Positions 4,227-38,321 of a stretch of DNA of 64,000 bases are shown one piece after another (the first letter of the stretch is position 1; every line of letters starts with the position of its first letter). The DNA comes from Styela clava (Eukaryota), in assembly GCF_964204865.1 (NCBI RefSeq), contig NC_135256.1, forward strand, positions 13,268,001 to 13,332,000, read 5' to 3'. Under the pieces are notes generated by a model. The model worked only from the letters and a program-made list of their open reading frames with translations. It had not been told where the DNA came from and ran no database searches. Made by a program: the position numbers and the translations under genes.

Positions 4227-4911
4227 TAGTGGTTCTTAACCTTTCCGAGAACCCATGCACTATTCGGCATGCTCCCGCCGAACCCCATCGTACTGAACGG
4301 TTCAAATTAGGAGCCCAATCCTAACTTAATAACGGGGAAACTATGTTCGTGCTAGCTAAAAGGAAATGAACATTATGGTTTAACCCTAGATACCAATCAG
4401 ACATGTGGAAATAGCAATCGTTTTGTCACAATAGTGCCGCGACAGGAAGAGCAGATTTTTTTCTTTTATTAGTTGTGCGAATGAAAAAGCGGAAAACGGA
4501 TAAAAAAAAATAGCAACTTTGAAAATCCAAAAGATGATAATATGCCTCAAAAACGTTTGTAGTTCAAGTCATTCGGTTCTCAAACTCCAAACTGCATTGA
4601 AATGTGGATAAAAGCTTTTGCCAATTATTTTATGATGATAACTTCCAGAAAAGCTCTGCAATTAAGTATTACTTGTCACAAATTGATCACCTAGTAATAT
4701 TCAAACTCGTTCTGATTTTGCATTCATTTATGTACAATTTACTGCCAATATTCAATTTATCCGTAAAACTTAGTTTATTAATTTTATTAGTACGGTAGAT
4801 TACGGATATTCAGCTCAAGAATCCTTGCTTGTCAAAACAACCGAAAAGATATTTTAAGGTCATAAGCAGAAAGCACCTAAAAGCGCTATCATAGATTAGA
4901 TAGGTACAAAC

Positions 4912-6123: not shown

Positions 6124-6154
6124 GTACAAACACCAAAGCGCGCGACGTCAGTGA

Positions 6155-6463
6155 AGATATTCGTTTTCAATGAAACGTACTAGAATCTACGAACATTGAC
6201 GGTCCACTGAAGCTTATATCTGCGATATGCACAAAAACAAAATAGCAGATACGTCTGTGGAGATATGCGTTTTCAATGAAACGTACTAGAATCTACAAAC
6301 ATTGACGGTCCACTGAAGCTTATATCTGCGATATGCACAAAAACAAAATAGCAGATACGTCTGTGGAGATATGCGTTTTCAATGAAACGTACTAGAATCC
6401 ACAAACAATGACGGTCCACTGAAGCTTATATCTGCGATATGCACAAAAACAAAATAGCAGATA
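6155..6463. repeat. Tandem repeat, 106-bp unit, about 2.9 near-identical copies
   Basis: CGTTTTCAATGAAACGTACTAGAATC recurs at 6162, 6268 and 6374. Confidence 0.95.
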
Positions 6464-7151
6464 CTGCACTTTCGATTTTATATCTGCACCACTACACCTA
6501 CTGCGAAAATCGAGTGAATTTTCAATACAGCATTAATATGCGTTATAAATCATACTCCACCTGAATCTTTTATTATATTACCCAATAAATCTCTGGTAGT
6601 CAGCAGAGTCAGAGACATTTGACAAGTAATTGAAGAACTTGACTAGAGTAGCAGAAACACCACTTTTGCGTCACAAGAAACATAGATCATGTGCTGGCCA
6701 CCCTGCGGCTGTTTGAACGGAGGGGAATAGAGAGCATGAATGAATGAAGTGGGCTTGCTGCCCCAATAGTCAGTAACCCATATAGCTTTTTTAACCTTTC
6801 CTGACAAATAGAACTGTCAAAAAGATTGTAATTCAAGCTTACCTAAGGGTGAATCAAAGTCAAATACAACTTGGAAGTTCAACCATGGAAATCGGTCTTT
6901 GTTGCAGTCACTTTTGCCTACATCACTTATCTTATCATTCTCCCGCTAAACCATAGTATATTATAGAATATCATCAAAATATTACAAAAACTAGGTTCCA
7001 AAAATTGCAAGTATTAAAGCACATAATGCATTTTAATTTATATAATGTGGGCAATACAGCAGCAGTTTAAACAATATTATTGTCATGCCATACCCACTAG
7101 AAAAAATACGAATGAAATATTAGCAGTGGATTTCAATCTAGATCAAAATGG

Positions 7152-9734: not shown

Positions 9735-9795
9735 ATCTGTTAAAGCTTCTCCTCAGGGACCAGCTTCATCTGAAAAAATAGAGTAAGTATATAAA

Positions 9796-10239
9796 GGGTC
9801 TCATGTAGTTTCGTACCTAACATACTTCTAGTGGACGTAGCATGACAATTTTTTTCACGTATCAATCCTAACCCCCACCTGACTACACCATCCAAAAATG
9901 ACGTCAACACGACGTCACAGTGACGTAATAAAAGCCTTCAAACTGTACGAACTGCCAACCAAGACGCGCAAACGAGCACCCGAAATCGAACAGTTATTTC
10001 TCTCGTTTTCTCGTCGAAACGATTCCGATAGAAGAGAGATCGATAATGTCAGTCAGTTGTTTATCGTCGGCGCCAATGCCATTTCGGGCGATTGTACGTA
10101 TATTTGGCAAGCTCTATGACGTGATTGTGATGTCGTAGTGACGGATGGCGTAGTCAGATAGGGGTTAGGATTGACATATCAAAATATTGTTATGCCACGC
10201 TCACTAGAAGTACGATAGGTACGAAAGTACACGAGACCC
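9796..10239. mobile_element. Largely palindromic MITE in the putative USPL1 5'-UTR intron
   Basis: GGGTCTCATGTAGTTTCGTACCTA... is inverted to ...TAGGTACGAAAGTACACGAGACCC; imperfect complementarity extends over more than 150 bp. Confidence 0.85.
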
Positions 10240-10924
10240 GTACATAAATGTCTGAATGCTTCAGATCAGTACAATTGCAGAGTAGTGTGCAAAGCATTCG
10301 CAATGTAGGAAGCCAGTAATGCTGTAAAAAAACTTTAAAAGTTATGGCAGTATGGCTGCCATAGGGCAGTAGGGCATTAATAAAATTAGAAAAAAGAGAG
10401 AAGCTTGAGATAAATTAGCCTATATGGTAACCGAAAAAAAAAATAATGCTTAGCTCATTAGTTATTCCCATAACTTGCTCGAGAAATAGTTTACTGGTGA
10501 CTTCAGGAAGCTTACAGAACAAAAACTGACCTGAACTCTTTGGAAGAAATCACATGTGGAACGTCCTCGAATCGTTCAGCAAAACGCCGCGAAAACGCAA
10601 TAAAAGCGATCGTGTTGCGCGGAGTCAAATTCTAATCTAAACTATTAAATAATATCGATAATTTTTATAGAGTTAGACTATAATGAAAACAATGAAAAAC
10701 AGTATAAAACAATATCGATGATTTTTATAGAAGTAGCCCAATTTACACATTGTTTTGTGTTGGCCAGTATGCAAGACCGTTGAAGGTCATCAAGGCTCCT
10801 GACCAATTTAACACTGTTATTGATTAAGAAGTCGGAATTAATTGTCACAATATAAATATAAAAAAGACGGAGACGGACGGACGGTATAATCATAGTTAAT
10901 ATTCAGTAAACTATGGTATAATAT

Positions 10925-11540
10925 GTTTCCAAGAGCATCGACTTCCTTGTTTACTTCGTAACATTGGCCGATCAACAAGAAGCAAAAAGTGACGTACCAA
11001 TGAGACTTTTCGCATCCGCTCAGACACTTTTATCACTCGGACAGATTTTCAGGCATGGTTGTAAACATTACCACGTTTTCGGATTCTATTTGTAAGTTTT
11101 TGGTTGTGTTTCGGAAATTAAAGTATGAATTAAAAAATTTAATGATCATTTTGTCTGCTCAAAAGTTTCAGTTTAATTACAGTAATCAAAAATTAGTCCA
11201 AAATAGCTGTGGTAGACTAAGCTGAAATTCTCTACTGGTACTTTCAAATAAACAGGTTGTTGAGTGTTTTGAATTAGAAGACGTGGTTGTAAACATCACC
11301 TCGTTTTCGCGTTTTTGAATTTTATTTGTTAGTTTTTGGTTGTGTTTCGGAAATTCAAGTATAAACTTAAAAATTCGATGATCATTTTGTTCGCTCAAAA
11401 GTCTGCTTTCAAATAAACAGGAAAAATATACCCCAGTTTACAGGCGCAAACTCGCGAATCAACTCATAAAATAAGCATCAAAAATGTTACAATGGTAAAG
11501 CATAGGAAGAATTTTTCAGGGGATCAAAGGTCGGGGAAAC
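10925..11540. repeat. Dispersed repeat family (further copies ~23092-23360, ~41814-42296, fragment ~36470-36595 inverted)
   Basis: Shared TTCCTTGTTTACTTCGT...GCATCCGCTCAGACACTTT block; ends resemble TTTCC...GGGAAA; this copy has an internal duplication at ~11060-11400. Confidence 0.8.
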
Positions 11541-12130
11541 GTCCAATGGAAGTCATGCGTAAACAGCATAAAATAAACAAAATTTATTACTACGCAAAAA
11601 ACAGATCCTTTTCTAGTAGTTAATCATTATGGCATGAAAAAAAAAAGTTCAGGTAGCAGTCGGTTTGCTTTTACCTAAGACCGTGGCTCCCAACCTTTGG
11701 CGTTGAATTCCTCCCTTCTTCTATTTTGGGACTCACCCTCACTTTGATTGTTCAATTTGTAATTGACCCTTAGTTATATGTGCAAGTTGCACTCTTGTTT
11801 TCGTAGAGTTCCAGTCTATATAGTAATGTGTGCATAAATGCCGTAAGTAAAATAGTATATAATAATGATAATAATAAAGAACTAAAGAATATTAGTAGTA
11901 GCCTACTACAGCAATACCAAAGTCGAAGCAAAATGCCACCTAAAAAACGGAGGAATTCTTCCTTGGTTGGGAAACGTTTTATGAATATATAAATGTTAAG
12001 GTTAAATAGTATTTTAAAGTTATTCGTTCTAGCTCCGTACAATAACGTTTTGTCTGACGGATTATATAGCAATATATGATAAAAGTTTTATCAATGTTGT
12101 ATGACGTGCCATCGACGTATGACTATTAGC

Positions 12131-12635
12131 CAGTGGCGTAGCAATATTCTCGTGACCCCCCCCCCGCAAAAATATTTCGTGAAAATGACCCTAAAAACTC
12201 TCGGACATAAGCTAAAACAACGCTCTTTTTATTTCGTCAAAAAGCAAAAATGTCGCTATTAAAAGCCAACGGTAACCTAAAATTTGTCGTTCATCTTGGT
12301 TACTTCAATATTTTCATACGTGCTTCCTCTTCTGCCATTTTTCTGCGTTTCTGTGCGCCACTGAGAGATTTTGCTTTCGACATTATTCTGACAGCCTTTG
12401 TAATTTTGCCGGTGCGATCAAACCAAACCACAAGATGCCGAAAATCGACGACTTCTTGGCATTGTTACGTAACAAAAAGATTTGAGCAGAACGAACATCA
12501 ACGTTATAAGATGTGCATTACTGGTTTTGCAATGCAGCTTTTGATTTTGCGGCTTAAATTTCTAAATTCTAACCGCTTGGGCCCCTTTGCGCTGTGGGCC
12601 CTCCCGCGGCCGCGGGGGTGGATGCTACGCCACTG
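12131..12635. mobile_element. MITE with 8-bp TSD (hAT-type)
   Basis: TIR CAGTGGCGTAGCA...TGCTACGCCACTG; perfect TSD CTATTAGC (12123-12130 and 12636-12643). A related end occurs at ~60013. Confidence 0.92.
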
Positions 12636-13147
12636 CTATTAGCTATTTGTATGTATGTATGCCATTTCTGACGGTCAGATAGGCTATTAGCTATTTCGGA
12701 CGGTCTGTTTCTAGCTTGGTTTCTAGACATCACTATAACGATGTGTCTGTGATTATGTCACATTTACGTCGGTGCGCAAACCTATCAAAAGGTTCGCAAG
12801 TAGGAATTATACCAGAAAATTTGGACTTATTTCTGTAGCCCGATCCAGGATCAATATAAATGAAATCCTGGTATTTCAAAAAGATAATTTTTGCGATCAC
12901 GCGCGTAATAACAAGACAATTCTATGAAACACTCGAAACTAATGAGCATGTCGTAATTCAGTGGTTCCCGACTTTTTAAATACTACGGACCCTTTTAGAA
13001 ATTTTCTGAAAACTGTGGACTCATTTAAAAAAAAGTCCATACCAGGGATGGCAAATCATTGACTCGCGGATCACAAAGTGACCTACCATGTTTACCAGTG
13101 ACCCGCCAAGTCACGAACTAAGGCATATATCATACTAACATTTTATT

Positions 13148-16013
13148 AACAAGAGAGCTATGCTCAAATATTTGGACACGTAAAGTCACATAACTTTGAT
13201 GACGTCATAGCGAAAAAAAAGTAATAGCCTTCTGGAGAAAATTTTTATCTTTAACCACTGAAAATTTTAAAGCAATTGGTCCAGTATTCGAAGAGAAAAG
13301 CGACTTTTTAAAAACGTGTCAAAGAACAAGAACAACAACAACAACATAATATTGAAACGATCGTTATGTCCACTACGTGTCCAAAAAAAGATGAGAGCTG
13401 AATTCACGGCGGCACCGGTACCTAACGTAGGTGCGGTACTGAGTTAGCAGTCAGCCAGCATCTTACCTGTACACTGTAGGCCATATAGGTAATTGATCAC
13501 AGAACAGTTGTTCCCTTGCAAATTTTATGTTGTTTACACTTTAGGACAGATAATTGATCACAGAACAATTCTTCCCTTTCAAATTTTATGTTGTTTCCAG
13601 TAGACTCTCATCAGAATAAACAAATATAGTAGGCTACAAGTGCTACAACGCTTGCATTACTGCACTGGTAGGACCGTGAAAGAATAAGTTACGGTAATTT
13701 CATTGTGGTAAGACACCGGTACCGGCACCAGTACCAGTATCGTACTTACGTACTGAGCTACCAGTACCGGTTAGCAGTCAGCCAGCATCTTACCTGTACA
13801 CTGTAGGCCATATACGGTAATTGATCACAGAACAGTTGTTTCCTTGCAAATTTTATGTTGTTTACACTTTAGGACAGATAATTGATCACAGAACAATTCT
13901 TCCCTTTCAAATTTTATGTTGTTTCCAGTAGACTCTCATCAAAATAAACAAATATAGTAGGCTACAAGTGCTACAACGCTTGCATTACTGCACTGGTAGG
14001 ATCGTGAAAGAATAAGTTACGGTAATTTCATTGTGGTAAGACACCGGTACCGGCACCAGTACCAGTATCGTACTTACGTACTGAGCTACCAGTACCGGTA
14101 CCGAACCTGTAGGTCTGATATTCCGTTCCGCATACGATAGGCTATAAAACTTGCATTGCAGCATTAGTAATACCGCGGAAGGAATAAGTCAATTTCACTG
14201 CGTTACGGTACCGGTATGGCAACTTACCAGTACCGACCTACAGTAGCTGTAGTACTGAGCAAGACAATTGATCGCGAAACCGCTTGAAATAAGTGTAAAA
14301 CAGTGTTCCCATGAGTAAAAATAAATACCGCGAAATTTTGTATGAAATATCATATCTCATAGGATTCATATAAAATTTAAGAATAAATAAAAGTAATAGC
14401 CTTCTGGGGAAAAATATAATCTTTACTCACTGAAAATTTCAAAGCAATTGGTCCAGTAATCAACGAGAAAAGCGATTTTTTCATAACGATACCAAGAAGA
14501 AGACAAATAAGAACAAGAACAACAAAAATACCAAAACGATCGTTATGTCCACTAACGTGTCCAATAATAAAACCTGCCTTAATTCAATCTAACAAGAGAG
14601 CAATGCTCAAATATATGGACACGCAGAACAATTCCCCAAAAATCATATGCGGTGACCAACGACTAACATACCGACGGTGACTTACCAGTACCTGTATCGG
14701 GGTACCGTGACGGTACAGGGACTGTCATAGATATTTTAGGTCCTGTGACAATTGAAACATCAGTTGAAATATCTCGTGATATGAGTCAATTATGTACCGT
14801 ATTATCGGATCAGGTACCGAACCACAGTCAAACATTTCACATAAAAACGATACTAAATAACATGCGTCAACTTAACACCAGCCGAATCGGGGTACAATTT
14901 TTGGTACAGTGACTGTCATAGCCGTTTAGGGCTGATGGACAATTCGAATACACGGACAACTCACCAGGCCTAGGGTGGTGTAGCCAGTCTGCGGACAATT
15001 TCATTCAAACCGCTATAAAACAAAAACCAATATATCTAACCCGTTAATTTTTTCACCGTGGGTGCATTGGCGGCATTTATTCTACACGCTAAACCTCGTA
15101 TTAACTTTCTACGACAAAGGGTTGAAGCTATACAAATCCCCAAAGTACGGCACTCGAAAGACGTATTTGCGACCGAACAACCAGTGTGCGACCACGGATT
15201 TCAAGCCTTGATCATCGTTTATGCTGCGTCGAGACTATCGCATACGCAGCCATACAGCAATCAAACAGACAAAACACGGTGGTCGCAAATTGTTGGTCTT
15301 GTGACAGCGTGAAAACATTGGGCTTCTAATTGCATTTCTGACCGTCATATATTTCAAGAACACGGTTATTTCGAACAAAACTCGTTAAATTATAAACAAA
15401 GCACCACATCACAGCAATCAAACAGACGAAAACACGGTGGCCGCAAATTGGTTGACAAAGATATTATCGACGTATCGGAAATGCACACCCCCTATTCCCC
15501 CTCCTTCAAATGTAGAAACGCGAAACTTTCAAATATGGTTAAAAGAAACACAACTCTACCCACCTGACAAGTTTCATCTTTTTATTTCTCATATTTGTAT
15601 GGATTTTCAAGCTTTTGACAGCTACGAGTTAGTTCAGTGTCACCGCGCTGTGTTACGGTACCAGAACTTCTCTATCTTTAGAAGGTCCTGTCTTGTGACA
15701 GCGTGAATTGAAATTGAAAGATGGTCCGTTGGACACAAAATGGCGTCCGATATCCGTAGAACGTTTAGTGACGTCATAGCAAACAAAAACAAATCTTACA
15801 GAGCTAACAGAAATATTTGAAATAAATAAAAGTAATAGCCTTCTGGAGAAAAATTTCATCTTCAACCACTGAAAATTTCAAAGCAATTAGTCCAGTAATC
15901 AAAGAGAAAAGCGACTTTTTAAAAACGTGTCAAAGAACAAGAACAAGAATAAGAACAAGAACAACAACAACAACATAATATTGAAACGATCGTTATGTCC
16001 ACTACGTGTCCAA
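13148..16013 (-). mobile_element. Head-to-tail array of three Helentron-associated (HINE-like) elements, family A
   Basis: Units 13148-13383, ~13384-14563 and 14591-16012 share a ~170-bp end block with an AAC/AAGAAC microsatellite ending in CGTGTCCA. The opposite end has TGGACACG (subterminal IR) and a GAGC-N3-GCTC hairpin next to AACAAG; this end is degenerate in unit 2. No TSD. Confidence 0.7.
13443..14099. repeat. Tandem duplication of a ~327-bp unit inside the HINE array
   Basis: GTTAGCAGTCAGCCAGCATCTTACC at 13443 and 13770; each unit carries an internal ~60-bp direct repeat (TAATTGATCACAGAACA...). Confidence 0.92.
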
Positions 16014-16414
16014 CAATATGTGAAGTACTATTTTATAGTAGGCCTATACCCGGGCTTGGATTTACCAATACAAAGAGTAGGCTGAAGCCCAAGGACGTTG
16101 AGCCGCTGGTTCGAGAATTTAATCGGTTTGAAATTTTATAAAACTGATATTGGTTTATTTTTTTTATCAGATACGGTCGAAAAAAATGAATTTGACTAAT
16201 TTTGAAAAATTCTTCCCCTTTAACTTTGAAACAAAAGATATTAAGTTAATCGAACAGTTTTACCCTAACAGTGCATTTATTTATTTTTTAAAGAATAAGC
16301 AAATATCAATCTATAGCTCTACCAATTTATCTAAGCGTTTTCACACAATTTAAGAATTCATTCATGACGTATTTATATCCTATTAGCTCCGCAAAACCTC
16401 CGTTTGTTTCACGA

Positions 16415-16618
16415 GGTTCCATTACATTTGAACCCACGTACATTTGAACCCATGACAATTGCACATGCATGCTATTGCACATATGAAAATTTTTTTTGTT
16501 CTACGGATAGTTGAACCCATACTAACCCTAACCCATGGGTTTTAGCACCCGAATATAGATTGAACCCGCGGATATACACGTGGGTTCAAATGTACATGGG
16601 TTCAAATGTACGGTCACC
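16415..16618. mobile_element. Short MITE with 9-bp TSD (Mutator-like)
   Basis: TACATTTGAACCCA repeats inverted at the two ends; perfect flanking duplication GTTTCACGA (16406-16414 and 16619-16627); internal CTAACCCTAACCC. Confidence 0.8.
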
Positions 16619-18928
16619 GTTTCACGATGATTGGCTTTTAATGGACGCGCGCTGCTTTTGCATCATAACATCCAAGTACATTCCCCCTAATCTCGGGTAC
16701 TAACAATTAGTTTTCCGCAATCATGACAAATCGAAAAAAATTACATATGAAGTCAAGTAGGCTACATGATGAATCTTGGGCTTACTTGAGTGTGTATTGC
16801 ACTTAGAGACATTAAAGGTCTTGGCTCACAGCTCTTTAAAAAAATGAATTGTGGCGTCAATATGAGAAGTACAGAGATCTGTCTGTCGATTTTCTTTCTA
16901 AATGTCAAAAAAAATACGCTGACTAGACTTTTTTGAAGAGAAAGAACATGGGGTTGGGCAAAATGGAATTAATCGTCCAGCTTCATGTGGAGGGTATCTT
17001 ACTCGCATTGTAAAGCAGTACGCATACTACCTTTTCTTATGATTATGCGATTTATCTGTTAATTTTTTTTTTAAAACTCGTCCTGTTACAGCGATTCGCA
17101 GTAGAAAGTGCATAAGCCCTAAACCAAGAGGGTGTGTTTTTGGGTATGCTACTTTGCAGCTTATTGTTTTCCCGCTTACAATGTCGTTTGGAAAGCGAAT
17201 TCTTTTAAACCTAAATATACGAAACCTGAACTAACAATGGGGAAAGATGGTAGTGACTTTAAATGCAGTTGGAAATTGATCGAAAAATATTTCGAAGATC
17301 TTTTGAAATCATAAAAATATTTGCCCTAGCATTATGAACGTATTTCAGTTATTCATATTCATGAATTTCCTAAAATCGAGAAGCAGAAACGCCAAGGATT
17401 ATGAGACGACTTGCAGAAGAGATGCAAAATCATGTTTCTCGTTGATGCAGATATTGTTTAAATATCTATGACCCACTGCCTTCTATTCCATATAATATAA
17501 TTTTTGCCCAATTCATTAAAAAAGGTTCGCCATCTCCGTCTATACTATTGCGTACAAGCGGCCTCAACCAGAATCAATGTTTCTCATCGAAACAATACAC
17601 AGAAACCGCTTTGAGGGCAAAATTAAAAACAGAAACACCCGTCAAAAAGAATCCAGTATTTTTTAAATGTGGCAGAAAGTCACCAAGTACTTGCCAACAT
17701 TCCGAACACATGAGCCACAGGGGATGAATATTAAGAAAGTTTAGATTAGGTATAAATCTTTCATTCATTGTTTAAATCATTTATTGTACTCAATGTTTTT
17801 CTCAGAATTGGATCACACATGACCAGACATAACATAACGTATATATTTACGCATCAACAGAACAAAAATCACCAAATTATAATTGACAAACAGACGACTT
17901 TTCTGGCCTGCATTATTCAATGCTGGAAAACACAAAACACCATTTTGATTTGGACTTTAATTGTTAAACATAAAACAAAGAGATCTCATCAATGATCTTT
18001 CATTTCAGTCACCCGATGTTATTTAATCAAGAATTCGTCGAATTTATTTATTATTTAACATGCGTAACTCACTTAGTTTAACACTGATTGTTTAAATATG
18101 CATGAAACTGTTTTTCTTGTTATAGTTGAACTATAAGGAAGTTGTCTGAAGAAGTCGTTACAAAAACGTTACATTACAGGTATATATTTGTGTTAGCGTG
18201 CAGCAAGATTCTTGAATCACTTAAAATATTCATCGTTAATCTCGCTACAGCATCCTTGTATTATATTCATACAGATCAACCGGCACAAAAGATTAGAAGA
18301 AGGATATAAGTAGTTAGTCCCACAGAAACCAAATCATAAAAAAAGACAGCGCAAAAATACAAACGTGTCGGGTTGTGACTAATCTCCCGCAGAAAAATAA
18401 CATACATAATAAGTTCATGTATATATTATATAATAAGTTTTTGCAAATTTTTTCCGTTAAATAGTTTTTAGTTAAATTTTCATTACACTATATATTATTT
18501 GAAATATAATTTCAGAATAAAATAATTTTTGATCGCCTATCATCTATTATTCCTCGCTTGTCATCAGATCTTTTGTGACCATGTTTACCTTAAATAAGTT
18601 TAACGTGGCTTTAAAAGATAAATATTTTAACGTCTTGTAGAAGATTGTGTTACAGTCGGTATTAAATTAGTTCTTGTCATGACGGTTCATACGCTTGTCA
18701 AGTTTTGCCATATTCCATCTATTTTTCATCAGTTTACTTTGAAATCCCACGAGAATAAAGTGAAATATACCCTAGATGACAAAATGATCTTTAATTGATC
18801 CGGACAAGCGAAGAGTGGGTTAGTGTCGTACCTCCAGACGACAAAGTTTAGTCTGCGTGGCTCCGTGGTTAGAAAAACATGCGAATATTCTTAACTGCTC
18901 GTTTCAACGTAAAGTGAAAGGTATTTTC

Positions 18929-26700: not shown

Positions 26701-27064
26701 CAAGTTCAAAGAAAATTATCTATCTATTTATCTAAGGTACCAGTACTGCAGTAGTCTATGAATGAATTTAAAAAACGAATAAAACATAGTATTCAATAAC
26801 AATTGTAAATTGAGTAAATAATTAAAACTGGAGATATTCAAAATATTTTACTCTATGGTTGGAGTGATGGAACTTATTTTTTCTAACTTTTCGAACATGT
26901 TGGTTTACAGGTTGCTGGTTTTTTTTACCAGTTATTATCAGTCATGTAACTCATTATTCCACAAATTCTTGATTATTGATGGATTACACGAATATGTATG
27001 GAACATTAACTTTCTAGTATATTTCACCTACATAACATTTGCTTGTTGATGCTTATTGAAAGAT

Positions 27065-30037
27065 ATGGGATGTGGATCCAGCAAGAGTGTCACAACTAAA
27101 AGTGGAACAGGTGATATTCCTAAAACTGTTGAACACAAAACTGATTCAGAAAATTTACAGACAGTACCAGAAGTCACTGAAAATGCCAAAATCAGTAACA
27201 AGGTTGCAGATAATACTGAAGTTTACAGGGATACAGAAGAATTAAATCAGTGTAATGCTGTAAATCAAAATCAAGAGGAGAATAGAGAACAAATACTGGA
27301 TCCCAAGCATAAAGATGCAGAAGAATCACTAACTCCTGCTCATTCATTTGCTTCTGATGATCTTGAAAATTTAGAAGATACTCTTGCTGATGAAACCGTG
27401 TTGAATGTATTACAAAACATCCAATCATTAAATGCAAAACCTGAAAATGTTGAAATTAAAAGCAAGACATCATCTCAAAAGCATGTGGAATTCGATTTGA
27501 GTCCACAGCTTGAGAGTCTCTCTGACAATGAATCAACCAACGTATCAACACCAATTCCAAGTGCTCAACCAGTCGATGGAAAACTGCCTGCTAACAATTT
27601 AAAAAACTCTGAAATCTTTTTCAATGCCTTGCATAAAGCATGCTCTGTGGCAGATAACAGTCAATTGCCAATATTAGCAGTACAAAGTGATTTGCTTAGA
27701 CTTGATCGCACGTTTTATTGCTTCAAAGGTGCCGATTTACTTATTGATATCACAAGCAAAATGAGTAATTTGTGCATTTTAGATCTGCATGGTGGACAAT
27801 GTGGACCTGTTGCATTCCGAGCAATTGTTAATGCTTTAATCAATGACCATCATATCAGGAACCTAAATTTATCAGACAATTTAGCAAACCCAGAATGTTC
27901 TGAGATGTTGGGGCAGCTTCTTTCAAAAAATACAACCCTTCAACATTTGAATGTGTCTGGAAACTTGCTTGGTAAAGATGCATTCTCGAGATATGTTGGC
28001 ACTGCATTACAAGAAAACTCATCTTTGAAGTCTTTAGATCTATCCAGCTGTGGTGCAACAGATTTACACTGCCTTTGTGAATCATTGAGAAATTCAACCT
28101 GTTCAGCAATGTCCACACTAATTGCCAGTCATAATCAGATAACTGATGGTCATCAATTTGCAATTGACCTGTCTTTAATACTTGAGAATGCAAATTGTGA
28201 ATTAAAATTTTTGGATGTTACTAATACTAATATATCAAGCTCAGGAATGAATGCTATTGTGGCATGTCTCAAAAATAATCAAACGCTAGAAAAGATGCTT
28301 ATTGGGCAAAATTCAATCGCTGATGTTGTCAGGCTTGGTGAGTTTATTGTAAATGCAGCTACTCATGATTGTTTGCAAGAAATTTCATTGAATAAAACTA
28401 AAATTGAAGGAGATTCATCAGAAAACATCGAAATACTTATGAATGATAAAGAAACAAGTACTTTGACCCATATTGGTATTGCGGACTGTGGGCTAACTGA
28501 TACTTTTCTCCAAAAACTTGCTTCTTGTCTAGACGGCAAGCTTTCAAAACTCGAATATTTGGATATATCTAACAACAATGACCTCAGCATTGATTGTATT
28601 AAACTTTTTGACAAAATGTGCAAAGGAAGTTTGAAATCTCTAAAAATTGCATTGCTGGAAAAGTTGGATGGGATATCCTCAATAATTTCACAATTTTCCA
28701 GCTTAGTCACAATTGATTTTACAAGATCAAGGATAAGTCCAACAGAGCTCAATAATATTTCATCAACATGTCAGCAAACATTTCAGAGCATTACTTTAAA
28801 TGGTGTCAAGCTGAGTGGAACTCCAGCTCTCAAATCCGTTATGACTGCTAACTGCTTTTCATCTCTCTCCTTTATCAGCTTATCTGGGTGTCAACTCAAT
28901 GATGCAGATTCTCAACCCATATATGATGCAATCAAGTCTCCTAAAGTCCCAATAGAGCAAATAGACCTTTCTGTAAATAGATTATCAAGTATATTCCTTT
29001 CCGGACTTACAGAGGCATTATTAGTACACGACTCCCATTCGTTAACAGACCTTAACTTGGCTAATAATGACATCGATGACTCTGGTTTGATATGTTTGAC
29101 AAAAATTTGGCAAACCTCCTCACATACATCCACACTGGAAAACATTAATCTGTCTTGCAATTCCATATCTGCGTCGTCTATTGTCAACTTTTTCAGTATT
29201 TTCAAAGCTCAAAGGTTTAATCTTAATGTTCTTGATTTGAGAAATCAAAATGAACCTTTTGGCGAAGAAGATATTACAGTTTTAGCTTCGACTCTAGAAG
29301 AAGTCTTTTTCAAACAAGGCACTGCTTCACAGAATGTTCATTTTACTATTGCTTTGTGTGGATTAGGGGGAACAGATGTGCCCCAGTTTTGCTTGCTTGA
29401 TTCTTCAGCCATACAAACTGATTTTGGAAATTTACGCAAAACTGCAATAACTTTAAATGATGTATTACAAATTGGTAAAGGACTAAGGATTCTAAATGAA
29501 GGCGATTCAAGAAACTCACCATATAATCTCAGTATAAAAGCATGGAATAACATTATTGGCTCTGATGCACCTAAATGGGCTTCAGTGACAACAGAGCTCG
29601 AGAAATCTGTATATATTAGTCATACTCCTGGCACGGTGACACAGCAGCGACTGCAAGGAACATTGGAAATGGATGCTGACTGTGAGGTAAAAGACATATT
29701 CCTGGTAAAAGATCCAATTATGAGAAAACCAACTGGGGCAGCATGGGTCCTGTTTGAAAATAAAATGTCAAAAAATAATGCTATTAAGTGGTATACATCA
29801 GGATATGCGCAGATGTATGGGACTCCATTTTTGATTAGTGAAATACCTGTTTGTATATCTGATGAAACAACAAATGCAGAATCACTCGCAAAACAGGACA
29901 TTGCGGCTCGAGAACTTGAAGAGAAAAAGAAGCAGGAATTAGATAGGCGTATGATGGAGGAGAATGAACAATTAGCTGCTGAACGTGCTCAATACCGTGC
30001 TGCCCATCCAGCTTACCAAGGTGGCAGAATATCCTAA
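27065..30037 (+). CDS. RNI-like leucine-rich-repeat protein with N-terminal MGCGSSK acylation motif and C-terminal RRM-like domain (990 aa, single coding exon)
   Basis: Long open frame; repeated LxxLxLSxNxl units (e.g. IRNLNLSDN, LQHLNVSGNLLG, LTDLNLANNDIDDSG). The likely ATG is 27065, 2 nt after an AG; the ORF track start at 27056 is a TTG. Confidence 0.85.
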   Translation: MGCGSSKSVTTKSGTGDIPKTVEHKTDSENLQTVPEVTENAKISNKVADNTEVYRDTEELNQCNAVNQNQEENREQILDPKHKDAEESLTPAHSFASDDLENLEDTLADETVLNVLQNIQSLNAKPENVEIKSKTSSQKHVEFDLSPQLESLSDNESTNVSTPIPSAQPVDGKLPANNLKNSEIFFNALHKACSVADNSQLPILAVQSDLLRLDRTFYCFKGADLLIDITSKMSNLCILDLHGGQCGPVAFRAIVNALINDHHIRNLNLSDNLANPECSEMLGQLLSKNTTLQHLNVSGNLLGKDAFSRYVGTALQENSSLKSLDLSSCGATDLHCLCESLRNSTCSAMSTLIASHNQITDGHQFAIDLSLILENANCELKFLDVTNTNISSSGMNAIVACLKNNQTLEKMLIGQNSIADVVRLGEFIVNAATHDCLQEISLNKTKIEGDSSENIEILMNDKETSTLTHIGIADCGLTDTFLQKLASCLDGKLSKLEYLDISNNNDLSIDCIKLFDKMCKGSLKSLKIALLEKLDGISSIISQFSSLVTIDFTRSRISPTELNNISSTCQQTFQSITLNGVKLSGTPALKSVMTANCFSSLSFISLSGCQLNDADSQPIYDAIKSPKVPIEQIDLSVNRLSSIFLSGLTEALLVHDSHSLTDLNLANNDIDDSGLICLTKIWQTSSHTSTLENINLSCNSISASSIVNFFSIFKAQRFNLNVLDLRNQNEPFGEEDITVLASTLEEVFFKQGTASQNVHFTIALCGLGGTDVPQFCLLDSSAIQTDFGNLRKTAITLNDVLQIGKGLRILNEGDSRNSPYNLSIKAWNNIIGSDAPKWASVTTELEKSVYISHTPGTVTQQRLQGTLEMDADCEVKDIFLVKDPIMRKPTGAAWVLFENKMSKNNAIKWYTSGYAQMYGTPFLISEIPVCISDETTNAESLAKQDIAARELEEKKKQELDRRMMEENEQLAAERAQYRAAHPAYQGGRIS

Positions 30038-31806: not shown

Positions 31807-34800
31807 ATGGGGGTTTTACAACGTGCTATAAACATCACATTTGCATATTTGGCAATTTGTTTTATTGGAAGCATATGGCTCGCCCATAAGTCATATGAAT
31901 TTCATCTGAGTGAAGTTGAAGTTGTTGCCCAAGATTGGTCTGGTGAGTCTATTATTAAATCTATACTCATTTAATCTTATATCTATGAATCACGAAAATT
32001 GTGCATGTCAATCTAAATGGTATATCGAGCAAATTATTATAGTATTTGACGTGACCATCTTTTCTTCTTTGTTTGAGGTGAAATGGGGCGGACTTCGAAG
32101 GCCGGGGACACTGACCAATCAGCAATAAGTCAACATTCCATTTGGAAATTATGGAGCCCATCACACATATATGAGCATGGTTATAAATATTGCCTCATTT
32201 TTGTGCATTTTCAAGTTATTTTTCAATTCTTATTTTGTATTCCCAGGAGCTTTAGTTAAGTTGCAGTAATTATAAATTTTCCTCCAAAAATGATGTGATA
32301 GACTAGGGTGAAAGTAGCTATCAGTACCGTACCTTAAGCGGCCCATGGTTGAATATTTTTATGAAAAATGATGGTTTTGATCATGTAAACCAGTTTGTAA
32401 GTACCAAAACACTCTCAAAGTAAGCATCAGTTTTGCAATAGTAAAGTATAGAAATAATTTTTCTGCGGTCAAGGGCCAATTTCGCAAAAGTAAAGTATAG
32501 GGAGAATTTTTCTGCGGCCAAGGGCCAGGGAATCAAATATTATTATTGGATGGATGAACCACAAAAAAATAATATAGCAGGAAATGCATTGCCATTAAAA
32601 AGGGCAAAAATCTGAAAATAATCTATTGAAGAAATAATTTAAATTCTTACGTGGCAAATTAATTATGCCTATGTTAAGAAATTAATTCAAAATTAAGGAA
32701 TAATTGAATATTATTAGAACTGTGTTTTGATACAGCATAAGTACTATTATTTTTGCTGTACTTATGTACATACATACTTTTATATTTTCAGAAAGTCCCC
32801 TAAAAACGCCATCTGTCGTGATATCTGAATCTATCGAAGGTATTCGTCAACAATTTATGAAAAAACATGAACAAGTTTTGACTGAAAACAAATTCCCTGC
32901 TTTGCAACTGAGCACAGGTATTTTATATGATATTTATAGAACAGGGATCAGCAAACTGTGGCCCTCGAACAAATGGCCCTTGCCCCAATATAATATGTGT
33001 ATATTTATGTCGTAACAATGACTTTTGTACGGTGTTTGTGTTGAATAAGTGGAGAAAGTACATGCTAGTTGTATCATATGTTAATTGTTAGTTTAGTTTA
33101 TCCATCAAAATTAGCTTTAGAATATCTGGGAAATGTAGGTTGTCGTTATCGATGAGGATTGATTAGCCGAACCAACTGTAAGAGCGCCATATTGGCCCAG
33201 TGGAACACAAAGTAAGTGTGTATGTTTGGCCCAGTAGTACATAAAGTTTCTCAACCACTGTTGTATGTATATATATATATATCACACTTTCTAAGAAAAT
33301 GCATAGATAGAGTAATATTGTAGAATGTAGATATTGAATCAGCAATTTTCATTCCAGAAAAAGCAGCATCAGACAGATAACCCAATATAGTTATTGCTGT
33401 AGTACATCTGACAGAGTAGACACTTTGATAGAGATGGTGGTACCATATTTCAAGAGTCAAATGAGGTCAGATAAGAATGTGAGCAAAGGTCACTGGTTGA
33501 AAGTCATTAATTGCTGAGCAGTTAGAGCAGGGTGGTTCAAAGTTGATAGCCTCGCGGGCCACACTATTATTTTGGATGTGTTCGCGGGCCACAAGAGTGT
33601 AGCTTATAAATAACGGCAGATTGATTGAATACAGAATTTTACCAAATTTGAGATACGGGAGGGTAATTACTAAATTTTCTGACATATAGGCAACATTTTT
33701 TGTTAAACCGTTTGTGCTGATTGCGAAAAACCACCCAGCAGGAATTATATTGTTCGGCCATAACATTAATATGTAGTTATCAGGCATAGCCAACCTAGGC
33801 TAATAAATTCTTCATTCGATTTTCAGTTATTTATGAAGCCTTTTGTTTAGCATATACATTTTGCTAGCATATATTCCCGACCCAAAAGATAGAAAAAGCC
33901 AGTTAACAAATCAGACTAGCCAAGCACATTATTCAACTTCGCTGGTTGCCTCAGCTAGCCATAACACTAGTCAATTAGGATAGGATAGGATTTACATATT
34001 CATCCAGGGGAGAGGAAAGTTGATAAGACGGCTCAATCATATGGTGAACCACGGCCTCTCGTCCGGTTACCAGTCCAGGTCGGGTATGGGATTAGTTAGC
34101 CAGTTATTTGTTTTCGGAAGTATGGACTTGATGGTGGAGGAAGCCGTTTTCGACCAGCGGTTACGTGAACCACCCTACGGCGGCGAGCAGTCCAGCAATC
34201 CTCTCGCACATGATCAGCCTTGCATGGGATTCGAACCTGCGAACCCACGAAGGGTAATCAGAGATGCGGGGGCGAGCGTATTCCTAACGTTGAGCACGAT
34301 GCGCCACACCGCCGACCAATTCAGTGATATTAGTGATGTAACAATATGTCAAAAGATTTTTCTGGTTATTTTTATGACGAAACAACACCAAATTTTGTTT
34401 TGTTCGATTTTTTGTTTACCCTCTCGCAATGGCAACTCGGGCCATAGATAATGAAGCACATGTGGCCCGCAGGCCTGGTTTGGACCACCCTGAGATAGAG
34501 TCACATTAAGAGATGATTGTTGAATATAATAAAATCTAGAAATAGAAATTATAATATATTGAATTCAAACGATCAAATTCCTATCAGAAAGAATGTTGGA
34601 CAAGTAAATCTTATGTTTTGAATTTTGTACTGGTATTGGAAACTCGATTCATATAATTGGAAACTTGATTTATACAATAGGGGGGGGGTGGATGACGATC
34701 TGAAGCAACTGAATAAACTGATTAGACCCAAACATTGTGAACATGTTGTTGAATTGTTTATATATCTTATTTGACGTTACTTGATATTGTTATCATGATT

Positions 34801-37800
34801 GTTTCAGAGATTCACTCTCTGTATAATTATCTTGTGTTCATTGACTTTTCTGATGATCGACACTGATATATAACTTCAACATTACAGGGGGTATTCATGG
34901 ATTAGTTCACTTGCTGTATGGATCATTATCTGAATTCCTCATTGTATATCATGCTCCATTACAGACAAGTGGCAGCAGTGGTAAGCATCTTATATGCATA
35001 TATGATCAAAAATATTTAAAAGTAATAATATCAATTTAAATTGTCGATATAGTTGAAATATTTTGCGCAAATTGTTAACAATAATAGACTCTTAGAAAAG
35101 AATCAATTTTCAGTTTTAAATATGATAAATTTTATTTACATCGTTTTCAATATGATATATCAGGAATAACAATTTATAGAAATCTTGACCACCTCTAAAA
35201 TATTCGCATCCTAACTTATGGTGATTTCAAAACTCCAGGATGTGACAATAATTAGCTACCTGTAACTGTTCATGTACTTAGGTATGTAAATCTTTACTTT
35301 AAGTCAGGGGTCACCAAACTTTTTTGACCGCGGGCCGGATATGACTCAAATTGTGTTGAAACGGGCTGGATGAATATTTTTGTCAATGCAATACAATAAA
35401 TTCACAAATGTGGGGAATATCGCAGAATATAGATCGAGAACATTCTAGTGAAAAAAATTAACATGATTTCCATATCGAGACAACTATCCTGAGTTTAGAT
35501 GTTATCAAAACGTTGCTGTCATGAATTAGAAATGTTATAAAATCCGCGGCCAAAAATGTACGCATCACATCTGCTAGGTACCGTTACGTCGTGTTGAAAT
35601 ACCGCTTATAAAAACGACTGCCTGCTGTAGCTTGGAATTCTATGAAATTTTGACATAATTTAGATAAAATAAACAACTATTATCTGGTATTTGATTTTCT
35701 CATTAGCGCATAAATTTCCCAACATTCGACGCTTTCAAAAATTACGCTCCAGTTATACGTAGCGCAAATTAATGATATTGTCTATGGACACCAATAAAAT
35801 TTATATGGACGTGTGTATTTCTTTCCTAACTTGATACAATTTTTATGAAGTTCGTACAATCAAAACATCGTTAATTATTACCCACAATGAACCACTGTCA
35901 AACTATCATGCACTCCAGCGTTTATTTACGACGATCTTTTGGCGGTGTCAATGACCGTTGCCAGAATAAAATCCTGAAATAGTCTCAATATACCATAGAT
36001 GTGACGCACAACGAAAGATTAGTGATTGATATGTGTTATTTTTCCATATTTAGTTCAGTTCTTATCAAAAAAGTAATACAATCATTATGGAAAAAATTGG
36101 CCTGTCGGGCGGTACTAAAATTCCGATATCTCCGTTATTTCTTGACCGTTTATTATAAACTTGGTAGTGTTTTCTATTTTTACTCAGATCTTTCCACTGG
36201 AGCAGTTTTTATTTAAATCGGATGAACTTTAATTTTTTTGTAACATACCTACATGAATATCCGCATTAAAGCAGTACAAAAGTTAGTGTGGCTTTTGAAA
36301 TTGAAGCAGTAGGCGAGGGATTACAGTACTGTTAGCACAAAATGCACATTCGACGTTTATTTTAGCACAAAAAACAAACAGTTCCGTCGAAAGCACGCGC
36401 CACGAGTGTTCAAGTGTATCGCAGAAAACGTTACTGCTGGTAGCATTCAAAGTTGCAAAAACGAAGTTTTGTTTACAACCACGACTGAAAATCTGTCAGG
36501 GTGACAAAAGTGTCTGAGCGGATGCGGAAAGGCCTATTATTACGTCACTTTTTTGCATCTTGCCAATTGGCCAATGTTACGAAATAAACAAGGACGACGA
36601 CGCTAGTGAAAATCTCCCTTTGAAAAAAATTTAGCCATTTCTGTGTGTTATTGCAGACCGGATAAAATGACGCCGCGGGCCGGATAAAATGACGTCGCGG
36701 GCCGGATTCGGCCCGCGGGCCGTAGTTTGGTGACCCCTGCTTTAAGTGGCAATACAAGGTGATGATTTGTAACAGTGAGTGAAGTACCATTCTTTGCCAA
36801 TACTGTATTATTTTCATTCCAGGGCGTCATCTCATAACAATGTCAATTACTGTATTGCAAGGAAGTGTGAAAGTAGTGAATGAAAGAACTGGAAAATATG
36901 TTCAATATAGTACAAGTGTGTATGACAAAATAGTTCAGTAAGAGTCTAAAACGACTCCATGTATCTGCAAAATAGTACCCGAATCACAAAAATCAAATTC
37001 TTTACATTGCTTATTGAGTATACAATTTTATGAGATGCTTTTTCCCAACCATCAATTTAGAAAAGCACTGTACAAATGACCACTGATCCACTATTTATAA
37101 GGACTGGAATCTTTTCTTCTCAGCTCTGGCTGCTAATTTTTTACACTCTGGGTGCGATGGAGAGCATGGTGTTTGAACCCTAGTGTTGTAGTAGGCGATG
37201 CTAGAGCGGTCAAGTCCAACGGTCTAACCACAAGTCCATGATTAAACTTCGTACTCTTTGTGTCCATCCTTTCATTTACCCACCATAAACGATCACCTCC
37301 ACTAGTTAATTTCTTGTTTTTGAAACTTAAGTGTAACAAAAATGAATCGCTTGTATATTTTTTGATTACCGATGCATATTGCAAGTTACTGTGATGAAAT
37401 TCTCTGTTCCAGATGCTAATTACACCCACCACAATGGTGAGAGGACCTTTGTTGAATTGGAAGAAAACACTATTCTTGTAGTCTATGGTAGAGGATTAGT
37501 TCCTATGACTATGGGGTACTGGTTATGTGATAGCCTAATCAGTTCAGCAGATCCAGCAACTGCATTTTTTGCCATCTACTATTACTTTCAAGGTTTGTAT
37601 GTTGTTTATTATCATGGCATTTATATCATACATATTATTTAATATCTTTTCTTTATACAGCTATATACTCCAGTCTCACTTTAAAAGAATTTTTCATTTC
37701 ACTGTACAACGACTTATGGATGTTAGCATCAGAAGGACTGGCATCCCTTCCCATTTTGTTGAACGACATGCAAACATACGTAACATCCGTATCAGGCACT

Positions 37801-37851
37801 ATCTCAAACATTTTCCAAAGTAGAAGTAAGTCCATTATGACAGATGCATAA
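31807..37851 (+). CDS. Divergent sigma-1 receptor/ERG2 family protein (272 aa); exons 31807-31942, 32792-32917, 34888-34980, 36823-36915, 37413-37592, 37661-37851
   Basis: Hand-spliced; all introns GT-AG, phase 1. N-terminal TM then WLAHKSYEF; GGIHGLVHLLYGSLSEF, SGSSGRH, HHNGERTFVEL and YGRGLVPMT align without gaps to recalled human SIGMAR1 (GGWMGAMCLLHASLSEY, GHSGRY, HGPGEATAVEW, EYGRGVIPST). The 93-nt exon matches human exon 3. Confidence 0.88.
33528..34492. mobile_element. hAT MITE in intron 2 of the sigma-1-like gene, carrying a nested SINE
   Basis: TIR CAGGGTGGT...ACCACCCTG; TSD AGTTAGAG / AGATAGAG; SINE-free homolog at 46323-46808 in the opposite orientation. Confidence 0.88.
33977..34316 (-). 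mobile_element. Full-length tRNA-derived SINE with (ATCCT)n tail
   Basis: A/B boxes on the minus strand; 3' tandem ATCCT; flanking CAATT duplication (33972-33976 and 34317-34321). Other fragments at 4067-4226, 48589-48728 and ~57540-57603. Confidence 0.88.
35305..36739. mobile_element. Non-autonomous hAT element in intron 3 of the sigma-1-like gene
   Basis: TIR CAGGGGTCACCAAACT...AGTTTGGTGACCCCTG; perfect TSD CTTTAAGT; subterminal GCGGGCCG repeats. Confidence 0.93.
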
Positions 37852-38321
37852 ATAATCAGCTTGATATAGGATTGCGGGTTAGAGTAATCTGTGAGAGTGA
37901 GTTGTCAAATTTAGCAATTGTCAACCACGATTTTCCTATTTCAATTAAAAAATATACCATATGTAAGCCATTTTTCTATTATGATTTAGTCATTTAACAC
38001 CTCAGTGCATATTGTTTGTCTAACATTTTTATCTTTCATTGTATTTTTACACTAATTTTTCATCACAAGATTAAAAAAATATTGACTGACCGATGGCGAT
38101 GATACTTCTTATATCAAAACTTTGATACCTGCGAAGTTATGTGTTTCTTATGCTATGAAATAAATAACCGGGCCTGCTCAACTTATGCCAAGACTCAACA
38201 AACCCTGTTTACACCGAAATTACTACACATATTACACGTCTTTCACAATTTATTTCAAAAATAGAATATATAAATTCAACTGATTGAAAAATTTGAACCA
38301 CCTCATTAGATATGGCTCCGG

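What the first reader, a model, noticed from the sequence alone, without database searches (positions are those of the whole stretch)
31807..37851. Intact sigma-1 receptor homolog lacking the entire canonical ligand-binding triad
Seen: an open 272-aa spliced frame whose core aligns without gaps to SIGMAR1. In human numbering Y103->F (SLSEF), D126->I (TMSITV) and E172->V (ILVVYGRG); also W89->I and W164->L. E102, R119, H154 and YGRG are retained, extra His residues appear (positions 90, 94, 120, 155), and a sixth exon adds a ~50-aa C-terminal extension. Established: E172 is the counter-ion for cationic sigma-1 ligands, H-bonded by Y103 and D126, and the equivalent acids are needed for ERG2 sterol isomerase activity. 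Inference: concerted loss in a preserved fold points to a non-canonical paralog with an apolar pocket (neutral sterol/lipid binder, ligand-independent chaperone or regulatory partner of canonical sigma-1). The gene is invisible in the ORF track.
Basis: partly seen in the sequence, partly recalled or inferred. Interest (0 to 1): 0.8.

Follow-up and report, generated by a model that had tools for sequence, protein, structure and literature searches.

The report
Sea-squirt sigma-1 receptor lacking binding acids
This sea-squirt gene is the animal's only sigma-1 receptor, and in it and in other sea squirts the acidic residues that hold drug-like ligands in the vertebrate receptor are replaced by greasy ones, which makes it a natural test of what this protein does without them.

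Summary
Window 31807-37851 (+) carries a spliced, transcribed ERG2/Sigma1R-family gene of Styela clava. Four of its five introns are confirmed by GT..AG joints in contigs of three RNA-like studies. It aligns gap-free with solved sigma-1 receptors and has Phe, Ile and Val at human Y103, D126 and E172.

Three whole-genome searches find no other family member, so this is the sole sigma-1 gene, not a paralog or partner of a canonical copy. The same replacements occur in all five full-length ascidian proteins examined (four named species plus one unnamed) and in four exon fragments. All 20 vertebrates examined keep the acids. The loss is therefore old and the gene is maintained.

Ascidians also share new Tyr97, Tyr107 and His120 and a helical C-terminal extension.

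Most likely it is an ER-membrane sigma-1 scaffold that no longer binds cationic ligands but keeps a hydrophobic barrel. This is a new variant of a known kind. I found no paper on it. Binding, an outgroup test and dN/dS remain undone.

The parts
31807..31942 (+). Exon 1: start codon, N-terminal transmembrane helix, start of the helical linker (residues 1-45 plus 1 base).
   Evidence: Translation. Donor GTGAGT. AF2 helix 2-27. RNA-like contigs reach it (bin 31880-32079; X3 5c row).
32078..32179 (+). Exon 1b: 102 nt, in frame (phase 1), 34 codons.
   Evidence: Open frame. Sites TTTGAG|..|GTTATA. depth at 32127 is X2 103.2 and X3 37.5, against intron values at 32196 of 28.3 and 4.0. The X3 5c row 31944>32105 has the same depth (37.5) as the exon 2-5 joints. 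X2 has a joint 32179>32797. Positions 32108-32200 have 3 further genomic copies at 74-75% identity.
32792..32917 (+). Exon 2: helical linker. It carries a polymorphic in-frame 6-nt insertion after 32822.
   Evidence: Joint 32917>34888 in X1, X2, X3 and not X10. The 274-aa allele P0021 has 2 extra residues here.
34888..34980 (+). Exon 3: GGxxG motif and barrel strands with E102 and the Y103 position.
   Evidence: Pfam PF04622 E 9e-6, profile positions 80-109..
34935..34937 (+). Codon TTC = Phe at human Tyr103.
   Evidence: Sequence. Alignments.
36823..36915 (+). Exon 4: GRH...MSITV strands (R119 kept, Y120H, D126I).
   Evidence: Joints 34980>36823 and 36915>37413..
36846..36848 (+). Codon ATT = Ile at human Asp126.
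   Evidence: Sequence..
37413..37592 (+). Exon 5: last barrel strands, VVYGRG, and the membrane-facing helices alpha4 and alpha5.
   Evidence: Pfam E 9.5e-8. 5hk1_A E 1.5e-7, gap-free.
37481..37483 (+). Codon GTC = Val at human Glu172.
   Evidence: Sequence. Gap-free alignment..
37661..37851 (+). Exon 6: end of alpha5 plus a C-terminal extension shared by ascidians; stop TAA at 37849-37851. The 3'UTR runs on beyond 37879.
   Evidence: Joint 37592>37661. Contigs X1 record 7 and X2 record 22 (849 nt) read through the internal GTAAGT at 37826 and past 37879. The extension aligns among 5 ascidians. Predicted helix 215-271 has block pLDDT 48-75.

Best explanation
This is the single-copy Styela clava ortholog of the vertebrate sigma-1 receptor (SIGMAR1, ERG2/Sigma1R family). 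It is an ER-type membrane protein with one N-terminal transmembrane helix, a cupin-like beta-barrel and C-terminal membrane-adjacent helices. In ascidians the Glu172/Asp126/Tyr103 unit that anchors cationic ligands is replaced by Val or Leu, Ile or Val, and Phe or Ile. The water-filled polar end of the barrel is largely filled with aliphatic side chains. The fold, the GGxxG oligomerisation motif, and E102, R119, R175, D195 and Y206 are kept. Inferred: the protein no longer binds classical amine sigma-1 ligands with high affinity and cannot act as a sterol isomerase. It would work as an oligomeric ER-membrane scaffold or chaperone. Its still hydrophobic barrel would either hold a neutral lipid or sterol or stay empty. 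The ascidian-specific C-terminal helix would add membrane or partner contacts. Shown: gene structure, transcription, single copy, fold, the residue states and their conservation in ascidians. Inferred: ligand loss, neutral-lipid binding and scaffold function.
For: Family and fold:
- PF04622 hits exons 3 and 5.
- P0001 matches Xenopus and human sigma-1 at E 1.3e-21 and 2.1e-19.
- The AF2 model has pLDDT 80.9 and pTM 0.71. Its best Foldseek hits are sigma-1 structures, E 1e-20, TM 0.86 to 7w2b_A.

Single copy:
- 2 of 14 PF04622 matches pass the cut-off, and both lie in this gene.
- The lamprey protein gives 2 of 2 matches here.
- The Ciona protein gives 2 matches here; the other 2 have E>5.

Transcription: four GT..AG joints in 3 of 3 RNA-like runs from three studies and in 0 of 1 DNA-like run.

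Conservation:
- Position 172 is V, V, V, V, L in 5 of 5 full-length ascidian proteins, and I, V, V, V in 4 of 4 exon fragments.
- Position 126 is I, V, V, V, V. Position 103 is F, I, F, F, F.
- All 20 vertebrates examined have E, D and Y.
- 17 columns are invariant in both clades, among them G87, G88, G91, E102, R119, R175, D195 and Y206.

Functional precedent:
- Asp126 and Glu172 mutants lose ligand binding (review PMC8293995 citing Seth 2001; passages read).
- Xenopus E169A binds progesterone unchanged (Kd 0.94 vs 0.98 uM) through hydrophobic contacts (PMC11224282; passages read).
- At the 14 hydrophobic contact positions listed in PMC8913746, Styela differs at 13. Of these, 12 stay hydrophobic or aromatic.
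Against: - No binding or activity data exist.
- The pocket geometry of the model could not be inspected, because the tools give no coordinates.
- Ascidian sequences are very divergent: 28-45% identity between the four lineages other than the two Ciona species, and tree branches of 2.5-4.8 changes per column against a median terminal branch of 0.12 over all 27 rows. Constraint may therefore be weak outside the scaffold residues.
- All five ascidians share new polar residues Tyr97, Tyr107 and His120. This fits a re-specified site at least as well as an empty or purely apolar one.
- Ancestral polarity rests on vertebrates only; no amphioxus, echinoderm, placozoan or fungal sequence was obtained.
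- The 'RNA' label of runs X1-X3 is the tool's guess.
- The major transcript seems to carry exon 1b, so the 272-aa form that was modelled may be the minor one.
- Only ascidians were named among the relatives; no thaliacean or appendicularian was.
Confidence: 0.7

Rival explanations
1. Re-specified receptor. The ascidian protein still binds a ligand, but through a new polar anchor formed by the clade-invariant Tyr97, Tyr107 and His120 in a re-lined barrel. That would give it a different, non-cationic ligand class.
For: 4 columns are invariant in both clades with different residues: L65F, H97Y, F107Y and Y120H. Positions 107 and 120 are listed ligand contacts in Xenopus sigma-1. 13 of 14 contact positions are changed, yet the barrel is kept. 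That looks like remodelling rather than decay.
Against: No structure was inspected, so it is unknown whether the three side chains converge. Position 97 is not in the contact lists I read. No candidate ligand was tested.
Confidence: 0.17
2. One reading: an extra, non-canonical paralog that coexists with and regulates a canonical sigma-1 receptor.
For: None found. It rested on the expectation that a canonical copy exists.
Against: The genome-wide six-frame searches with PF04622, a lamprey canonical protein and the Ciona protein find only this locus. In the word searches each named ascidian species appears with one gene: Styela as two alleles (P0001, P0021), and one protein cluster each for C. 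intestinalis, C. savignyi and Clavelina.
Confidence: 0.03
3. Decaying or functionless copy. The acids were lost because the gene is no longer under selection.
For: Branches are very long and identity among ascidians is low. The polymorphisms shown include 4 non-synonymous against 3 synonymous changes in the table, plus 2 synonymous ones read from a joint row.
Against: Frames are intact in 5 of 5 ascidian proteins of 253-272 aa. The transcripts are spliced in three studies. Both indel polymorphisms are in frame: +6 nt in exon 2 and +9 nt in exon 1b. Scaffold residues and a shared C-terminal extension are conserved. The core of the model has block-mean pLDDT of 86-93.
Confidence: 0.04
4. Alignment artefact. 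An acidic residue sits at the functional position after a register shift.
For: Styela has Glu at 163, 165 and 166 in the hairpin just before the strand.
Against: The alignment is gap-free and anchored by the invariant YGRG/GRG, P179 and G157 on both sides. The hairpin Glu residues are not conserved: Ciona has K, S and G there. No position other than E102 and D195 is acidic in all five ascidians.
Confidence: 0.03

Closest known systems
Vertebrate sigma-1 receptor (SIGMAR1; structures 5HK1 human, 7W2B/8W4B Xenopus)
   Same: Pfam family and fold (TM 0.86). Single N-terminal TM helix, cupin-like barrel and alpha4/alpha5 helices. GGxxG motif, E102, R119, YGRG, D195 and Y206.
   Different: E172V, D126I and Y103F. 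13 of 14 hydrophobic ligand contacts are changed. 40 residues that are invariant in vertebrates are absent from all ascidians. There is a 49-residue C-terminal extension and an extra 34-codon exon in the main transcript.
Tunicate sigma-1 receptor as used in Baeken et al. 2025 (iScience, PMC12398221; Phallusia mammillata)
   Same: The same kind of protein, treated there as the most basal deuterostome ortholog. It is described as having lost LIR motifs and carrying unique terminal motifs (passages read).
   Different: In that paper's main text the terms E172, Glu172 and D126 have 0 occurrences. The loss of the ligand-binding acids is not discussed. I did not obtain the Phallusia sequence, and the paper's supplements were not readable.
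Engineered sigma-1 mutants at D126/E172 (Seth 2001, via PMC8293995) and Xenopus E169A (PMC11224282)
   Same: They show what removing the carboxylate does: loss of amine-ligand binding, weaker DHEAS binding (Kd 18 to 456 uM) and unchanged progesterone binding.
   Different: Those are single laboratory mutations in a canonical background. Here the change is natural, multiple and old, and it comes with a re-lined pocket.
Fungal ERG2 sterol C8-C7 isomerase
   Same: The same Pfam family. One public Styela record is even named 'protein erg2 homolog'.
   Different: No ERG2 sequence was compared here. Without the acids an isomerase role is unlikely.

Membership tests
ERG2/Sigma1R family (Pfam PF04622) | Profile match above the curated cut-off (21 bits) | tested here: met
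   Exon 3 scores 25.6 bits and exon 5 scores 32.1 bits. The genome search gives 38.5 and 29.1 bits. PF04622.19 is precomputed on P0001.
ERG2/Sigma1R family (Pfam PF04622) | Fold: one N-terminal TM helix, a cupin-like beta-barrel and two C-terminal membrane-facing helices | tested here: met
   The AF2 model has helix 2-27, ten strands over 83-177 and helices 179-213. Foldseek gives E 1e-20 and TM 0.86 to 7w2b_A.
Canonical sigma-1 receptor (pharmacological sense) | Glu172 carboxylate that pairs with the ligand amine | tested here: not met
   Val in Styela. V, V, V, L in four other ascidians.
Canonical sigma-1 receptor (pharmacological sense) | Asp126 and Tyr103 supporting Glu172 | tested here: not met
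   Ile and Phe in Styela. Val and Phe or Ile in the other ascidians.
Canonical sigma-1 receptor (pharmacological sense) | GGxxG (87-91) oligomerisation motif, and E102 | tested here: met
   G87, G88, G91 and E102 are invariant in 27 of 27 sequences.
Canonical sigma-1 receptor (pharmacological sense) | High-affinity binding of (+)-pentazocine or haloperidol | not testable with these tools
   Needs a binding assay.
SIGMAR1 orthology group | Single-copy gene that groups with vertebrate SIGMAR1 to the exclusion of other family branches | tested here: inconclusive
   Single copy is shown. Apart from five long multi-stretch proteins that I did not fetch, the hits to exon 5 outside the ascidian-type group are vertebrate-type sigma-1. 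The tree has no outgroup, so it shows only a tunicate/vertebrate split at 100/99 support.
ERG2 sterol C8-C7 isomerase | Catalytic acidic residues and isomerase activity | not tested
   No ERG2 sequence was obtained. The acids at the sigma-1 positions are absent. Activity needs yeast erg2 complementation.

The most novel reading that the evidence does not exclude
Ascidian sigma-1 is not ligand-dead but re-specified. The clade-invariant Tyr97, Tyr107 and His120 would form a new polar anchor in a re-lined barrel. That anchor would recognise a non-cationic lipid, for example a dietary or sulfated sterol. The animal's genome shows no detectable squalene epoxidase or EBP, and only a sub-threshold lanosterol-synthase match. 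If so, the sigma-1 fold is an evolvable lipid sensor, and the Glu/Asp pair of other animals is tied to endogenous sterol or sphingoid metabolism rather than to the chaperone function itself.
Probability: 0.17. Interest if true: 0.7.

Novelty: new variant of a known kind. Interest (0 to 1): 0.5.

Why it matters
Sigma-1 is a drug target. Its endogenous ligand is still debated, as is the link between ligand binding and chaperone function. Here an old animal lineage keeps the gene as its only copy, expresses it and keeps the fold and oligomerisation motif, yet has replaced the whole amine-binding unit. That is a natural separation-of-function allele. It can show which sigma-1 roles need no cationic ligand. 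It also offers a comparison set for pocket engineering and, in Ciona, a tractable organism for rescue experiments with canonical and acid-less receptors. It also warns that proteins annotated 'sigma non-opioid intracellular receptor 1-like' in tunicates should not be assumed to bind sigma ligands.

Tried and rejected
**Searches that led nowhere**
- Exon-wise PDB searches with exons 3 and 4 gave nothing at E<=10. The peptides are too short.
- The word search cannot see full-length kin of a 59-aa exon because of its length window. I therefore went straight to the big search with exon 5.
- The word search with a mixed alignment (A1) was flooded by vertebrates. Of 550 hits, 120 were listed: 2 Styela records, and the rest vertebrate or unnamed. 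It gave no invertebrate outgroup.
- A tunicate-only alignment (A3) gave 4 proteins among 2736 candidates.

**Closed or unavailable sources**
I got no coding DNA of relatives, so there is no dN/dS and no exon structure or species for the unnamed relatives.
- The Schmidt 2016 and Schmidt & Kruse 2019 papers are not held. The ERG2 statement and the original structural description are therefore cited only through other papers or from recall.

**Not in print, as far as searched**
- Searches found one paper that uses a tunicate sigma-1 (PMC12398221). Its main text has no occurrence of E172, Glu172 or D126.
- Supplements are closed. Supplementary Fig. 3 of PMC11224282 (a species alignment) and the supplements of PMC12398221 might show tunicate residues.
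- Searches on tunicate sterol synthesis gave nothing usable.

**Other points**
- Rejected readings: paralog, pseudogene and register shift (see rivals).
- ARAGORN found no tRNA in the high-copy repeat of intron 2.
- Five long multi-stretch hits (P0003, P0006, P0008, P0010, P0014) were not fetched. I took them for repeat matches without checking.
Full report
**What is there**

Reading the window and translating by reference gives six exons on the + strand: 31807-31942, 32792-32917, 34888-34980, 36823-36915, 37413-37592 and 37661-37851. Every intron is GT..AG and phase 1.

- Pfam's ERG2_Sigma1R model (PF04622, cut-off 21 bits) hits 2 of the 6 exon peptides: exon 3 at 25.6 bits (E 9e-6) and exon 5 at 32.1 bits (E 9.5e-8). 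The other four give nothing at E<=10.
- Exon 5 alone aligns without a gap to human sigma-1 (5hk1_A, E 1.5e-7). The chain is numbered native+4. The alignment puts Val at Glu172, Leu at Trp164 and His at His154.
- Exons 3 and 4 alone are too short for a PDB hit.

**Identity of the gene**

A word search cannot find full-length relatives of a 59-residue query, so I gave exon 5 to the exhaustive search. It returned 20 proteins at E<=0.001:
- one 272-aa protein (P0001), 100% identical over the exon;
- six proteins with the same Val/Ile-for-Glu motif (P0002, P0004, P0005, P0007, P0009, P0011);
- eight vertebrate-type sequences with WMVEYGRG;
- five long multi-stretch proteins that I did not examine.

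P0001 contains the six exon translations in order. NCBI names it 'sigma non-opioid intracellular receptor 1-like isoform X2 [Styela clava]'. A 274-aa allele (P0021, 'protein erg2 homolog') differs by five substitutions and a two-residue insertion. So the organism is the ascidian Styela clava, and automatic annotation already holds the gene. All later full-length work used this stored protein by id.

P0001 aligns to Xenopus sigma-1 at E 1.3e-21, gap-free from about residue 75 to 212. I aligned it with a 223-aa mammalian receptor whose numbering equals the human one in this region.
- Changed: W89I, M90H, C94H, Y103F, Y120H, D126I, W164L and E172V.
- Retained: E102, R119, H154 and YGRG.
- The protein is 49 residues longer at the C-terminus.

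**Transcription and gene structure**

I laid contigs of three RNA-like runs from three studies (X1-X3) and one DNA-like run (X10) on 31880-37879.
- They show the GT..AG joints 32917>34888, 34980>36823, 36915>37413 and 37592>37661 in 3 of 3 RNA-like runs and 0 of 1 DNA-like run.
- Several intron bins have zero depth in X1-X3, while X10 covers all 30 bins.
- The RNA label is the tool's guess, but this pattern is that of spliced transcripts.
- Exon 6 is read through its internal GTAAGT (37826) and beyond 37879, so it is terminal.

There is an extra exon at 32078-32179: 102 nt, phase 1, with no stop. It has exon-level depth, while the flanking intron does not. At 32127 the depth is X2 103.2 and X3 37.5. 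At 32196 it is 28.3 and 4.0. At 32049 it is 45.4 and 0. The X3 row that spans exon 1 to this exon has the same depth (37.5) as the X3 exon 2-5 joints. It carries an allele that is 9 nt longer and still in frame. A direct exon 1 to exon 2 joint was not among the rows shown (78 joints were not listed). The main product may therefore have 306 residues rather than 272. The insert falls after residue 45, at the end of model helix 34-46 and next to the 47-55 loop. Two thirds of the exon resembles three other genomic places at 74-75% identity, which suggests an exonised repeat.

**Single copy**

In the 377-Mb assembly, the Pfam model finds 14 matches at E<=10. Only 2 pass the cut-off, and both are exons of this gene. 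The other 12 have E 0.56-1.8 and lie in long open frames. A lamprey canonical sigma-1 finds 2 of 2 matches here. The Ciona protein finds two here and two more at E>5. There is no canonical partner.

**Relatives**

A tunicate-only profile search added Ciona savignyi and Clavelina lepadiformis to Ciona intestinalis and an unnamed transcript. In five full-length ascidian proteins:

| Human position | Ascidian residues |
|---|---|
| 172 | V, V, V, V, L |
| 126 | I, V, V, V, V |
| 103 | F, I, F, F, F |

Four exon fragments have I, V, V, V at 172. All 20 vertebrates in alignment A5, lamprey included, have E, D and Y.

Column counts:
- 33 columns are invariant among the five ascidians and 94 among the vertebrates.
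- 17 are shared, including G87, G88, G91, E102, R119, R175, P179, D195 and Y206.
- 4 are fixed differently: L65F, H97Y, F107Y and Y120H.
- 40 vertebrate-invariant residues are absent from all five ascidians.

The C-terminal extension aligns among the ascidians. A tree separates tunicates from vertebrates at 100/99 support, with very long tunicate branches of 2.5-4.8 changes per column. It has no outgroup and so says nothing about the root.

**Fold**

AlphaFold2 on the 27-row alignment gives pLDDT 80.9 and pTM 0.71. The model has a TM helix at 2-27, a ten-strand barrel at 83-177, helices at 179-213 and a long low-confidence C-terminal helix. Foldseek's top hits are sigma-1 structures (E 1e-20; 7w2b_A TM 0.86, rmsd 2.9), followed at a distance by other cupins.

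**How it likely works**

Three papers (passages read) bear on this.
- Asp126 and Glu172 are needed for high-affinity ligand binding (PMC8293995).
- All synthetic ligands place an amine on Glu172. Progesterone binds Xenopus sigma-1 by hydrophobic contacts alone and is unaffected by E169A. A 'polar zone' (S114, Y117, D123, Q132, H151, T157, E169 in Xenopus numbering) holds water at the far end of the barrel (PMC11224282).
- PMC8913746 lists 14 hydrophobic contact residues.

Mapped onto Styela, 13 of those 14 contacts differ, and 12 of the 13 remain hydrophobic or aromatic. Of the seven polar-zone positions, D126, Q135 and E172 become Ile, Val and Val, and Y120 becomes His.

I infer that the protein has lost amine recognition and keeps a hydrophobic barrel on an intact oligomeric membrane scaffold. 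It would act either ligand-free or with a neutral lipid or sterol. The shared Tyr97, Tyr107 and His120 leave open a re-specified polar site. I keep that as the main rival and as the novel case.

**Weaknesses**
- I could not obtain non-chordate or fungal sequences, so the direction of change rests on the vertebrate sister group and on papers calling the acids 'highly conserved'.
There is therefore no dN/dS.
- The polymorphisms shown are too few, and the list is incomplete. The table gives 4 non-synonymous and 3 synonymous changes. A further 2 synonymous changes are read from a joint row. There are also two in-frame indels.
- Model coordinates cannot be inspected with these tools.

**Novelty**

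The sequences are public and auto-named. One 2025 paper uses a tunicate (Phallusia) sigma-1 as outgroup and notes its lost LIR motifs, but its main text never mentions E172 or D126. Seven literature searches found no description of the loss. Supplements were closed.

I rate it a new variant of a known kind, with interest 0.5.

Noticed in passing
whole genome G000: Six-frame Pfam searches find no EBP/EXPERA domain (PF05241) and no squalene epoxidase (PF08491). For lanosterol synthase (PF13243) there is only a sub-threshold 22-bit match. ERG4_ERG24 sterol reductases (PF01222) are found at two loci. Styela clava may be unable to make sterols. Exon-wise searches can miss genes, and I found no paper on this.
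   Followed up: partly
window 33880-34480 (intron 2): Extremely high-copy repeat. Summed contig depth in the DNA-like run is 133,000-237,000, against about 18 for unique sequence. It is also abundant in the RNA-like runs. It holds a 143-aa open frame at 34020-34451. ARAGORN finds no tRNA.
   Followed up: partly
window 35299-36745 (intron 3): A roughly 1.45-kb element bounded by 22-nt terminal inverted repeats that are 91% complementary, next to TTAA-like flanks. It is repeated in the genome: DNA-run depth is 4,500-17,000. It looks like a non-autonomous DNA transposon.
   Followed up: partly
window 32822 and 32080-32104: Two in-frame length polymorphisms in coding sequence. One is +6 nt in exon 2, seen in run X2 and in the 274-aa public allele. 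The other is an allele of exon 1b with 34 letters in place of 25, seen in run X3. Heterozygosity is high; intron contigs differ by about 3%.
   Followed up: partly
window 31923-32106: Contigs in X1 and X2 run unspliced across the exon 1 donor into exon 1b (X2 depth 45.4). Retaining intron 1a meets a stop at 31972-31974. An ATG at 32083 in exon 1b is in frame with exon 2. An N-terminally different product without the TM helix is therefore conceivable.
   Followed up: no
window 27056-30037: An intronless 993-aa open frame with leucine-rich-repeat-like sequence lies about 1.8 kb upstream on the same strand.
   Followed up: no
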